This document shows, in pieces, positions 23,201 to 26,200 of a stretch of 64,000 nt of DNA (position 1 is the first letter of the stretch; each line of letters opens with the position of its first letter). The translations under genes were made by a program, and so were the position numbers. The stretch is from Ranitomeya imitator (lineage: Eukaryota), in assembly GCF_032444005.1 (NCBI RefSeq), contig NC_091288.1, positions 212,226,001 to 212,290,000 of the forward strand, given 5' to 3'. The notes beneath the pieces were generated by a model. It ran no database searches and was not told the DNA's origin. It was given only the letters and a program-made list of their open reading frames with translations.

Positions 23201-26200
23201 AGTATTATAGTAGTTATATTCTTGTACATAGGGGCAGTATTATAGTAGTTATATTCTTGTACATAGGAGCAGTATTATAGTAGTTATATTCTTGTACATA
23301 GGGGCAGTATTATAGTAGTTATATTCTTGTACATAGGGGCAGTATTATAGTAGTTATATCAGGGTGTGACATGATTATATAACTAATCAGTAAGGCTACG
23401 TTCACATTGGCGTTCCGCCAATGTGCGTCGCTGTTGCGCCGGCGACGCAGCGGCGACGCGCCCCTATGTTTAACATAGGGGACGCGTGCGTCGTTTTGGT
23501 GGCGTTTTTCGCCACGTGCGTCGTTTCCGACGCTAGCGTCGGACGCAAGGAAACGCTACATGTAGCATTTTCTGTGCGTCTGATTTTCGTCGGAAAACGA
23601 CGCACGCGTCGCAAAACGCGCGCGTTTGCGCGCGTTTTAGCGTGCGTTGCGTCGCCGACGCACGGCGGTGCAACGCTAATGTGAACGTAGCCTAAGGAGA
23701 TTATTGATCTGAGTTGTGACTGGGGACATTAGTACAGGACGCTCGGGAAGGGAACATACTGGTAATGATTTATGCAGTGGTCGGGTTGTTTCATCTTCAG
23801 GACCCCTGAGGGTGCAGATTTCGGCCATTAGACCACGAGCTTCCCTTGTGAGCCGCTTTCTTACATACACACATATATATATATATTCTCAGAGGACGGG
23901 TTGTGTGGAGTGGGGGCAGCGTCCGTGTAATGTGAACACGCGATGGGGGTCACATGCAGGGAATAACCGAGGCCTTGTTGTGAGGAGAACAATGGGACGT
24001 GTGTCTTACACTTTCTTACACCACAGACCCTTCTTATCCCCCCACATTGTGACGTCTTCTAGGTTCTGAATCGACCATGTTGCATAATAATAAATTCTGC
24101 AACTTTCCAATATACTTCAAAATGGCGAGGAACTGATGTATAAAGATCTCCGCTTATACAGACTGAAGATTGTGCCAGTCCTCCTCGCACAGCTGAGGGT
24201 CTGTTACAATGAGTCACTTCTATATAGTGAGCTCAGTCCATGACACGAGGGCTGCACATCTCGGCTCCGGCAGACCGACATGACTGTGACTTAGAGGAAA
24301 GGAATATTTTGCTCAGAGAAGATGAATTTCCAGGAAGGGTCGTCAGAAAGAGGAAGGACGGGCGAGGAGCAGTGTGTGAAGACGGGGGTTCTTAAAGGGG
24401 TTGTCCCTCTAAATACATCCATCACCCAAACCCACAGTATAGGGGATGAATGTATAACCTGGTCATCTACAACGTGCTGCTGTGTGGCCCCCCCCAACAG
24501 GAGGCAGCGCCTACAAACATCCCCCCAGCATGAGGCAGCGCCTACAAGCAATCCCCTCAGAAGAGGCAGCGCCTACAAACATCCCCCCCCAGCAGGAGGC
24601 AGCGCCTACAAACATCCCCCCCCAGCAGGAGGCAGCGCCTACAAGCAATCCCCTCAGAAGAGGCATCGCCTACAAACAACCCCCCCCCCCCCAGCAGGAG
24701 GCAGTGCCTACAAACATCCCCCCCAGGAGGAGGCAGCGCCTACAAACAACCCCCCCCCCCCCCAGCAGGAGGCAGCGCCTACAAACATCCCCCCCAGCAG
24801 GAGGCAGCGCCTACAAACAACCCCCCCCCCCCCAGCAGGAGGCAGCGCCTACAAACAACCCCCCCCCCCCCAGCAGGAGGCAGCGCCTACAAACAACCCC
24901 CCCAGCATGAGCTAGCGCCTACAAACAAACCTCCCCCCCCCCCAGCAGGAGGCAGCGCCTACAAACATCCCCCCCAGCAGAAGGCAGCGCCTACAAGCAT
25001 CCCCAACAGGAGGCAGCGCCTACAAGCATCCCCAACAGGAGGCAGCGCCTACAAGCAACCCCCCCCAACAGGAGGCAGCGCCTACAAACAACCCCCCCAG
25101 CAGGATGCAGCGCCTACAAGTATCCCCCCCAACAGGAGGCAGCGCCTACAAGCAACCCCCCCAACAGGAGGCAGCACCTGCAAGCAACCCCCCCAACAGG
25201 AGGCAGCGCCTACAAGCAACCCCCCCCAACAGGAGGCAGCGCCTACAAACCCCCCAACAGGAGGCAGCGCCTACAAGCAACCCCCCAGCAGGAGGCAGCG
25301 CCTACAAGCAACCCCCCAGCAGGAGGCAGCGCCTACAAGCAACCCCCCAGCAGGAGGCAGCGCCTACAAACAACCCCCCCAACAGGAGGCAGCGCCTACA
25401 AACATCCCCCCCAGCAGGAGGCAGCGCCTACAAACAACCCCCCCCCCCCAGCATGAGCTAGCGCCTACAAACAAACATCCCCACCCCCCAGCAGGAGGCA
25501 GCGCCTACAAACATCCCCCCCAGCAGAAGGCAGCGCCTACAAGCATATAATAAGCCCAAACTAAAAAAGATCATATGGAACTTCTGTACCATGCTCACAA
25601 CCCAGAATAGGGGAGCCCAGTACAGAAAAAACCACTACAATTAGATAATAGGACACTCCCAAAACTACATTATTTCAGACAAGAAAACTGGAGTAATAGT
25701 CCATAAAAAATCAACTTTATTGAAAAACCAAACAATAATAATATTAATAATACAGTAGATATTAGTACAAAAACAGAATATGATAAACAGATGGATGGCT
25801 ATGGTAGCACAGATAAAGACAGCGCGGGGTAAGACTGGTGCCAAAAATCATTCCCTTAAAGTGCATAGTGCCATAAAAATACCAAGGAGAGAGGAGGAGG
25901 CTAAATGTATTTCATTTAAATGTTTCATTGGTTAAGTCCATGTGGACCGGTAACTGAGCCCTGTACACTGACTCACGCCACTACATAATGTATCAAAGAG
26001 TCACATATAAACCTCCAATCCTTACCCCTCAGAGATGGCCGACAGAAAGACACCGCGCTGTGGCCCCAACGCGCGTTTCGCGTTTGCTTCGTCAGGGGGC
26101 TGGTGCTGCTAGATGACTAAGGCTGCTATTTAAAGACCCCCCAAATGATTGTAGATGAGCGCCACATGATGCGGCGCATGTTCCCGCACACACAGCCGGG

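What the first reader, a model, noticed from the sequence alone, without database searches (positions are those of the whole stretch)
26063..26100. Hammerhead ribozyme motif on the sense strand of a CLCN7 intron
Seen: the minus strand reads GCCCC CUGACGA AGCAAACGC GAAA C GCGC G UU GGGGC. All core boxes are intact, stem I has 5 bp, and cleavage would occur after GUU between 26068 and 26067. Established: minimal type I hammerheads with a palindromic stem III loop occur in Penelope-like elements and amphibian satellites, and cleave mainly as dimers. Inference: because CLCN7 is transcribed from this strand, every pre-mRNA contains the motif in intron 12. It could cut nascent RNA through intermolecular dimers, or be silent as a monomer. 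The extra A before stem II is a common PLE variant.
Basis: partly seen in the sequence, partly recalled or inferred. Interest (0 to 1): 0.78.

Follow-up and report, generated by a model that had tools for sequence, protein, structure and literature searches.

The report
Retroelement hammerhead motif in frog CLCN7 intron
A short RNA motif shaped like a self-cutting hammerhead ribozyme really is present in an intron of a frog chloride-transporter gene, but it came in with a young jumping-gene fragment of a kind that litters frog genomes and, standing alone, it most likely does not cut.

Summary
The motif is real. Window 26100-26063, minus strand, has every hammerhead core box, a 5-bp helix I, a one-pair helix III with a palindromic tetraloop, and GUU at the cut site (26068/26067). 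It is the only such motif in the window. Rfam Hammerhead_1 matches end to end but below threshold (20.5 bits, gathering 34).

It lies sense in the CLCN7 intron that follows the exon for CLC-7 residues 328-366. It is not part of the gene: it sits mid-way in a 1147-bp ORF-less insertion (25546-26692) that splits a 32-nt minisatellite and has an exact 12-bp target duplication. Around the motif is a CpG-rich core with a TATA-like box 34 nt upstream, a splice-donor-like site 37 nt downstream and an AATAAA further on. That matches a Penelope-like pseudo-LTR or non-autonomous derivative.

Predicted folding disfavours the hammerhead shape in a single copy (-6.5 against -14.7 kcal/mol). Dimers between separate RNAs are predicted to be negligible. 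Published work finds single motifs of this type inactive.

Frogs carry thousands of these, many in introns, and this scan has noted many in the same genome. Verdict: ordinary new member of a known kind, probably silent.

The parts
26063..26100 (-). Minimal type I hammerhead motif. Helix I 26100-26096 pairs with 26067-26063. Core CUGACGA 26095-26089. Unpaired A 26088. Helix II 26087-26080. GAAA 26079-26076. Helix III plus tetraloop 26075-26069. U17 at 26068, with the predicted cut between 26068 and 26067.
25546..26692 (-). 1147-bp ORF-less insertion that carries the motif. The strand is taken from the hammerhead and the promoter-like signals. There are no internal long direct or inverted repeats and no other copy in the window.
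25534..25545 (.). Target-site duplication, copy 1 (CGCCTACAAGCA)
   Evidence: removing the insert and one copy restores the 32-nt period
26693..26704 (.). Target-site duplication, copy 2 (identical 12 nt)
24489..25545 (.). 32-nt minisatellite, lower half of the array split by the insertion
26693..27220 (.). 32-nt minisatellite, upper half of the same array
26040..26430 (-). CpG-island-like core of the insertion (59% GC, CpG observed/expected 1.09), containing the hammerhead
26127..26134 (-). TATA-like box TTTAAATA, starting 34 nt upstream of the first base of helix I. A CRE-like TGACGTCA lies at 26261-26254.
   Evidence: motif match only, function inferred
26021..26026 (-). Splice-donor-like GGTAAG, 37 nt downstream of the motif
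   Evidence: motif match only
25716..25721 (-). AATAAA on the hammerhead strand, the same strand as the CLCN7 transcript
   Evidence: motif match only
27262..27378 (-). CLCN7 exon upstream of the intron; aligned part equals human CLC-7 residues 328-366
   Evidence: E 5e-13 to PDB 7bxu
20701..20772 (-). CLCN7 exon downstream; aligned part equals CLC-7 residues 382-405. A short exon for about residues 367-381 appears by eye near 20800-20860.

Best explanation
The motif is a Penelope-type minimal type I hammerhead. It was brought in by a young 1147-bp ORF-less retro-insertion, either a pseudo-LTR-like fragment or a non-autonomous derivative of a Penelope-like element. The insertion landed in a minisatellite inside a CLCN7 intron, in the same orientation as the gene. 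In its home element such a motif lies in the pseudo-LTR near the transcription start. It is thought to process element RNA when two copies pair through their palindromic helix III. Here there is a single copy with a 2-bp helix II. It should fold into a competing hairpin that buries G12 and the cut site. It would therefore be catalytically silent, or nearly so, in CLCN7 pre-mRNA, with no role in the gene. Shown: the motif, the insertion and its duplication, the gene and strand, and the predicted folds. Inferred: the Penelope-like origin, the promoter, donor and poly(A) roles, and the silence.
For: Motif and core are intact. It is the only hit in the window and is absent from 300 shuffles once the palindrome is required. 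Hammerhead_1 aligns over the full model. Four of the five hallmarks listed for metazoan Penelope hammerheads are present: a nucleotide between 9 and 10.1, the G10.1-C11.1 pair, a palindromic 15.2-16.2 plus loop 3, and a helix I of 4-5 bp. The insertion has an exact 12-bp duplication inside a tandem array, and Penelope-like elements show an insertion bias for microsatellites. A TATA-like box, the motif, a donor-like site and AATAAA lie in a CpG-rich core. This matches pseudo-LTRs that hold the start site, a 5'-UTR intron and the hammerhead. Monomer folding gives -6.5 kcal/mol for the hammerhead shape against -14.7 for the misfold. Dimer association is about 1.8e3 per M, and the double-hammerhead shape is 0.16% of the dimer ensemble. 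In published work single min-HHRs did not cleave and dimers cleaved weakly. The anole Poseidon hammerhead needs its protein, and no RNA-seq ends fall at its site. About 44% of Xenopus retrozyme copies are intronic.
Against: No reverse transcriptase or GIY-YIG ORF lies in the insertion or elsewhere in the window. No second copy could be fetched, so family membership, covariation and the link to an autonomous element are untested. Helix II is far shorter than the 6-8 bp typical of Penelope-type motifs. There is no tandem or inverted partial copy and no recognisable 'tail'. The score is below Rfam's gathering threshold. The + strand ends in AATAAA, then 24 nt, then GAAAA, so a LINE-type retrocopy of the opposite strand is not excluded. 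Nearest-neighbour energies ignore tertiary contacts and proteins.
Confidence: 0.7

Rival explanations
1. The motif is an active intronic ribozyme. It cuts nascent CLCN7 pre-mRNA by pairing with a second pre-mRNA, by pairing with abundant transcripts of the same repeat family, or with help from a Penelope-like protein. It thereby lowers or modulates CLC-7 expression, as the CPEB3 intronic ribozyme does for its host gene.
For: The core is intact and the motif is sense to the gene. The double-hammerhead dimer (-31.1 kcal/mol) is more stable than two misfolded monomers (-29.4). Very small sequencing runs hold 35-49% of the element's sampled 31-mers, so partner RNA might be abundant. There is a precedent for intron ribozymes tuned to co-transcriptional splicing. 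The anole element's hammerhead cleaves when its protein is present.
Against: The monomer hammerhead fold is about 8 kcal/mol worse than the misfold. Predicted dimers are 0.35% of strands at 1 uM, and only 0.16% of those have the active topology. Min-HHR dimers are slow even in vitro. Helix II has 2 bp and no loop-loop contacts are recognisable. No conservation or RNA-end data exist. The insertion is young, so no selection for a host role is visible.
Confidence: 0.05
2. The motif is a chance look-alike in an unrelated retroposed sequence. A promoter-like CpG-rich segment contains a TGACG half-CRE and a tandemly duplicated heptamer (AAACGCG twice). Together with flanking C and G runs these happen to spell hammerhead boxes. 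On this reading the insertion was made by another retrotransposition machinery.
For: The heptamer duplication at motif positions 16-22 and 23-29 supplies the helix II 3' strand, GAAA and half of helix III. Helix II is only 2 bp. The Rfam score is sub-threshold, with about 70 matches of this score expected by chance in a 6-Gb genome by scaling the E-value. No Penelope-like protein is nearby. There is an AATAAA-plus-short-A end on the + strand.
Against: Window-level expectation is below 0.007, and zero once the palindrome is required. Four independent Penelope-type hallmarks not forced by the core boxes are present. Frog genomes carry thousands of true motifs (about 9000 in X. tropicalis), so the prior strongly favours a real one. 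The surrounding TATA, donor and CpG-rich layout fits a pseudo-LTR.
Confidence: 0.12
3. It is a monomer of a non-LTR retrozyme, a tandem-repeat circular-RNA element, rather than a pseudo-LTR fragment. The RNA would normally be cut at each hammerhead of a multimer and circularised.
For: Amphibian retrozymes carry type I hammerheads with a one-pair helix III and a palindromic tetraloop. Retrozyme consensus lengths reach 972 bp and monomer copies are common and dispersed. Retrozymes are held to be Penelope-like derivatives, so this overlaps the best explanation.
Against: There is one copy only, no tandem arrangement and no terminal redundancy. At 1147 bp it is longer than any reported consensus. 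The helix I internal loop and loop 2 contacts of canonical amphibian motifs are not recognisable. The insertion ends do not coincide with the cut site.
Confidence: 0.1

Closest known systems
Minimal hammerheads of Penelope-like elements (Cervera & de la Pena 2014, PMC4209133)
   Same: Type I topology with an open helix I of 4-5 bp. An unpaired nucleotide between A9 and G10.1. The G10.1-C11.1 pair. A palindromic 15.2-16.2 plus loop 3, so that two copies can build a long helix III. Very numerous in frogs, mostly as single dispersed copies.
   Different: Helix II has 2 bp here instead of the usual 6-8. No RT/GIY-YIG ORF or second pseudo-LTR accompanies it. Family consensus and covariation could not be examined.
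Amphibian satellite/retrozyme type I hammerheads (newt satellite 2, axolotl HHR_Amex1; PMC7229834)
   Same: One-pair helix III capped by a palindromic tetraloop. The GAAAC-GCGC-G sequence is close to the Rfam Hammerhead_1 consensus. Weak as monomers, active as dimers.
   Different: Those sit in 330-350-bp tandem repeats with a 4-bp helix II and conserved loop 1/loop 2 contacts. Here there is a single copy in a 1147-bp unit, with no recognisable loop contacts.
Conserved intronic hammerheads of amniotes (RECK, CTCL, DTNB; Rfam HH9/HH10; review PMC6155905)
   Same: Type I hammerhead, sense strand, inside an intron of a protein-coding gene. Thought to derive from retroelement hammerheads like those of amphibians.
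   Different: Those are conserved across birds, mammals or reptiles and are proposed to be domesticated. This one is a young insertion with no evidence of conservation or activity. Hammerhead_1 was the only hammerhead family reported.
CPEB3 HDV-like intronic ribozyme (PMC10919898)
   Different: A different ribozyme class that is monomer-active, conserved in mammals and experimentally shown to matter. None of this is shown here.
Anolis Poseidon element hammerhead (PMC11167929)
   Same: A vertebrate Penelope-like hammerhead at the pseudo-LTR/ORF junction, with no cleavage by the RNA alone.
   Different: There the ORF starts inside the motif and the element protein assists cleavage. Here no ORF follows the motif.

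Membership tests
Hammerhead ribozyme, type I (Rfam RF00163) | Conserved core: C3 U4 G5 A6 N7 G8 A9, G12 A13 A14, A15.1-U16.1, H17 not G | tested here: met
   every position is canonical, N7 = C, H17 = U
Hammerhead ribozyme, type I (Rfam RF00163) | Three helices around the core, with helix I open-ended | tested here: inconclusive
   Helix I has 5 bp. Helix II has only 2 bp plus a 4-nt loop. Helix III has 2 pairs plus a tetraloop.
Hammerhead ribozyme, type I (Rfam RF00163) | Score at or above the family's gathering threshold (34 bits) | tested here: not met
   20.5 bits in a 161-nt scan; no hit in the 4-kb or whole-window scans
Hammerhead ribozyme, type I (Rfam RF00163) | Hammerhead fold is a favoured structure of the RNA | tested here: not met
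   Monomer: -6.5 against -14.7 kcal/mol for a competing hairpin. The dimeric form is feasible at -31.1 but is a minor state.
Hammerhead ribozyme, type I (Rfam RF00163) | Site-specific self-cleavage after H17 | not testable with these tools
Penelope-like element min-HHR | Unpaired nucleotide between 9 and 10.1; G10.1-C11.1; palindromic 15.2-16.2 and loop 3; helix I 4-5 bp | tested here: met
   One search compared with the criteria in PMC4209133
Penelope-like element min-HHR | Long helix II (6-8 bp) | tested here: not met
   2 bp
Penelope-like element min-HHR | Located in the pseudo-LTR of an element encoding RT and GIY-YIG endonuclease | tested here: inconclusive
   No such ORF in the insertion or window. 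The layout is pseudo-LTR-like. Most genomic min-HHRs are solo copies.
Penelope-like element min-HHR | Belongs to a genomic consensus family with covariation in the helices | not testable with these tools
   No other copy could be fetched; the rest of the genome is not on hand
Non-LTR retrozyme | Head-to-tail tandem repeats of a 150-450-bp (up to about 970-bp) unit, each with a type I hammerhead | tested here: not met
   Single 1147-bp unit, no internal or terminal repeats
Domesticated intronic hammerhead (HH9/HH10 type) | Conservation of the motif at the orthologous intron across species | not testable with these tools
   Orthologous loci are not available. The exact TSD and undecayed CpGs argue for a recent insertion.

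The most novel reading that the evidence does not exclude
The cassette may be a working unit rather than debris. Its own TATA-driven transcripts would start at or within a few bases of helix I, so the hammerhead would sit at the extreme 5' end. When paired with a second family transcript, it would remove a capped leader of about 33 nt, giving uncapped 5'-OH template RNA for a protein-free Penelope-dependent element. The same abundant family RNA could pair in trans with the sense copy in the CLCN7 intron and cut a fraction of the pre-mRNAs. That would make a young retroelement insertion a trans-triggered brake on a lysosomal chloride/proton exchanger gene.
Probability: 0.04. Interest if true: 0.55.

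Novelty: new member of a known kind. Interest (0 to 1): 0.15.

Why it matters
If it is as read here, it matters little. It is one more solo Penelope-type hammerhead among the thousands known in frog genomes, and about two in five such copies lie in introns. It has modest value as a clean specimen. The insertion is exactly bounded and young, with intact CpGs. It shows the whole TATA, hammerhead, donor and poly(A) layout of a pseudo-LTR-like unit. It is also a natural case of a sense-strand hammerhead in an essential gene's intron, the raw material from which the conserved amniote intronic hammerheads are thought to have been domesticated. Only evidence of cleavage at 26068/26067 in vivo would raise its importance.

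Tried and rejected
2. Looking for other copies: none in the window (blastn). A spurious 96-aa ORF of the element gave no hit in the protein word search. Exact-pattern scans of the core in metagenome and viral contigs found nothing.
3. Protein remnants: no Pfam domain in the element's ORFs, and no RT-like ORF in the window.
4. Tandem or inverted Penelope-style architecture inside the insertion: none.
5. DNA-transposon reading: rejected, since there are no terminal inverted repeats and the duplication is 12 bp.
6. Hammerheads with covarying core pairs elsewhere in the window: none.
7. Pinning the short exon for CLC-7 residues about 367-381 by PDB search: no hit, the query is too short. The next exon was confirmed instead.
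Exons were searched one at a time by reference, so the intron number was not verified.

Full report
OBSERVATION.
- Helix I has five pairs (26100-26096 with 26067-26063).
- The core box CUGACGA is followed by one unpaired A.
- Helix II has only two pairs (G-C, C-G) closed by the loop AAAC.
- GAAA follows, then helix III, made of A15.1-U16.1 and C15.2-G16.2 around the palindromic tetraloop GCGC.
- U17 is at 26068, so the predicted cut lies between 26068 and 26067.

IS IT MORE THAN CHANCE? A structural descriptor written for this check finds it as the only hit on either strand of the 64-kb window. This holds even when the C3-G8 pair is allowed to covary. In 300 Markov-shuffled windows the relaxed descriptor gave 0.0067 hits per window, and none had a palindromic helix III.

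Rfam's Hammerhead_1 model aligns over all 45 model positions with 20.5 bits. That is E 0.0082 for 161 nt times 4227 families, or about 8e-4 for this one family over the window. The score is below the gathering score of 34. The match was lost to speed filters in a 4-kb scan and in the whole-window scan. Scaled to a genome of several Gb, tens of matches of this score are expected by chance. The call therefore rests on context as well as on the motif.

GENE CONTEXT. Exon-sized ORFs on the minus strand match solved CLC-7 structures better than CLC-6:
- residues 191-227 at about 32172-32062;
- residues 301-328 at about 27834-27751;
- residues 328-366 at 27378-27262;
- residues 382-405 at 20772-20701;
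- a stretch matching residues about 496-523 inside 17072-18178.

The motif is therefore on the transcribed strand, in the intron of about 6.4 kb that follows the exon for residues 328-366. I searched exons one by one and did not build a joined model, so the label 'intron 12' is unverified.

WHAT CARRIES THE MOTIF. A 32-nt minisatellite runs 24489-25542 and resumes at 26693-27220. The 1147 bp between them (25546-26692) is an insertion. It is flanked by an exact 12-bp duplication, CGCCTACAAGCA, and removing the insert plus one copy restores the 32-nt period. The insert has no ORF with a Pfam domain. It has no long internal direct or inverted repeat, no terminal inverted repeats, and no second copy in the window.

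Read on the hammerhead strand, the insert runs as follows:
- an AT-rich and pyrimidine-rich 5' part;
- a 391-bp core at 26430-26040 with 59% GC and CpG observed/expected 1.09, against 0.53 for the whole window;
- an AT-rich 3' part.

Within and after the core lie these signals:
- a CRE-like octamer at 26261-26254;
- a TATA-like TTTAAATA at 26134-26127, starting 34 nt before helix I;
- the hammerhead;
- a donor-like GGTAAG at 26026-26021;
- an AATAAA at 25721-25716.

These are motif matches only; their function is inferred. The exact duplication and the undecayed CpGs indicate a recent insertion.

COMPARISON WITH PUBLISHED ELEMENTS. Cervera and de la Pena list features that recur in metazoan Penelope-like hammerheads beyond the core boxes (PMC4209133):
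- the G10.1-C11.1 pair;
- palindromic 15.2-16.2 and loop 3;
- a helix I of 4-5 bp;
- a long helix II of 6-8 bp.

The first four are met here; the last is not. They count about 9000 such motifs in Xenopus tropicalis, mostly as solo copies.

Craig et al. place hammerheads in pseudo-LTRs. They note that pseudo-LTRs hold the transcription start and a 5'-UTR intron. They report non-autonomous derivatives and an insertion bias for microsatellites (PMC8557442). The layout found here fits that description.

A 2026 preprint finds that about 44% of Xenopus retrozyme copies lie in introns and derives retrozymes from pseudo-LTRs. Amphibian satellite and retrozyme hammerheads share the one-pair helix III with a palindromic tetraloop, and work as dimers (PMC7229834).

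WOULD IT CUT? For the 38-nt RNA, the hammerhead secondary structure scores -6.5 kcal/mol. The minimum-energy fold scores -14.7. That fold keeps helix I but pairs the 3' half of helix II plus G12 with the 3' half of helix III plus U16.1 and U17, which buries the cut site. The cause is a tandem duplication of the heptamer AAACGCG at motif positions 16-22 and 23-29.

The double-hammerhead dimer has an eight-pair helix III built from the palindrome. It scores -31.1, against -29.4 for two misfolded monomers and -33.9 for the best dimer. The ensemble association constant is about 1.8e3 per M. That gives 0.35% of strands in dimers at 1 uM, of which the active topology is about 0.16%. These energies ignore tertiary contacts and proteins.

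The published experiments point the same way:
- single min-HHRs gave no detectable cleavage, and dimers gave only low activity;
- the anole Poseidon hammerhead cleaved only with its protein present, and no RNA-seq ends fell at its site (PMC11167929).

The downstream exon is about 5 kb away, which leaves minutes at most before splicing. The CPEB3 intronic ribozyme shows that intron scission can regulate a host gene (PMC10919898), but that ribozyme is fast and active as a monomer.

ABUNDANCE AND THE FAILED READS TEST. Twenty public runs from eight studies hold part of the element. They include runs of only 57-84 million letters that hold 35-49% of its sampled 31-mers. Two related organisms hold 12-16%. 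Two larger runs of the same species hold none. This suggests that the sequence is multi-copy or expressed, but I could not tell which.

After that I sent none of those letters to any pattern, protein, paper or findings search. The exception is one by-reference Rfam scan of the whole window, which included them.

EARLIER NOTES OF THIS SCAN. These are unchecked leads. They name the genome as a poison frog, hold 144 entries on hammerheads and Penelope-like elements in it, and describe the same TATA, hammerhead, donor and poly(A) layout at other places. One note covers this very insertion. I re-derived its boundaries, duplication and signals independently.

VERDICT. The best reading (0.7) is a Penelope-type minimal hammerhead in a young, ORF-less, pseudo-LTR-like retro-insertion that happens to lie sense in a CLCN7 intron and is most likely silent there. 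The rivals are:
- an active intron-cutting ribozyme (0.05);
- a chance look-alike in an unrelated retrocopy (0.12);
- a retrozyme monomer (0.1, overlapping the best reading).

This is a new member of a known kind and of low interest unless cleavage at 26068/26067 is shown in vivo. A cryptic exon or premature polyadenylation caused by the sense-oriented cassette would be a likelier host effect than ribozyme cutting.

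Noticed in passing
window 26072-26085 (minus strand; motif positions 16-29): The heptamer AAACGCG is tandemly duplicated inside the hammerhead. The two copies supply the helix II loop and 3' strand plus G12, and then A13 to the first half of helix III. The repeat creates the competing hairpin that outcompetes the hammerhead fold.
   Followed up: yes
window 26037-26046, 26316-26325, 26393-26402: A 10-nt word (TCTGTCGGCC on the minus strand; the third copy differs by one base) occurs three times in the CpG-rich core of the insertion. 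It may be a repeated binding site or a trace of internal duplication.
   Followed up: no
window ~26440-26021 (minus strand): A long pyrimidine tract ending in an AG near 26430, followed about 400 nt later by GGTAAG at 26026, could define a cryptic exon in CLCN7 pre-mRNA that would contain the hammerhead. An AATAAA in sense lies at 25721.
   Followed up: no
window 17100-18000, 18570-20192, 20900-23359, 24489-27220, 28353-31500: Nearly every CLCN7 intron in the window holds its own long minisatellite: units of 35 nt (20900-23359), 32 nt (24489-27220) and 57 nt (28353-31500, about 47 copies at 95-98% identity). GC-rich proline-codon-like arrays abut the exons at 17072-18178 and 18570-20192.
   Followed up: partly
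window 23393-23693: 38-nt inverted arms (84% complementary) lie 225 nt apart, next to the 35-nt minisatellite. The structure is MITE-like.
   Followed up: no
window 57682-58392 (minus strand): An ORF with a strong Pentaxin domain (Pfam PF00354, E 1.5e-32) lies upstream of CLCN7 on the same strand. From memory, a pentraxin gene (PTX4) neighbours CLCN7 in human, which would mean conserved synteny.
   Followed up: partly
window 911-1858 (+) and 63158-63679 (+): A 316-aa acidic ORF contains a TEAD-interacting omega-loop motif (PF15238, E 4.6e-7). A weak Tc1/Tc3-type transposase helix-turn-helix fragment (E 0.0035, below cut-off) lies near the window's end.
   Followed up: partly
window 2400-2532: A run of 133 N (assembly gap or mask); left untouched.
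   Followed up: no
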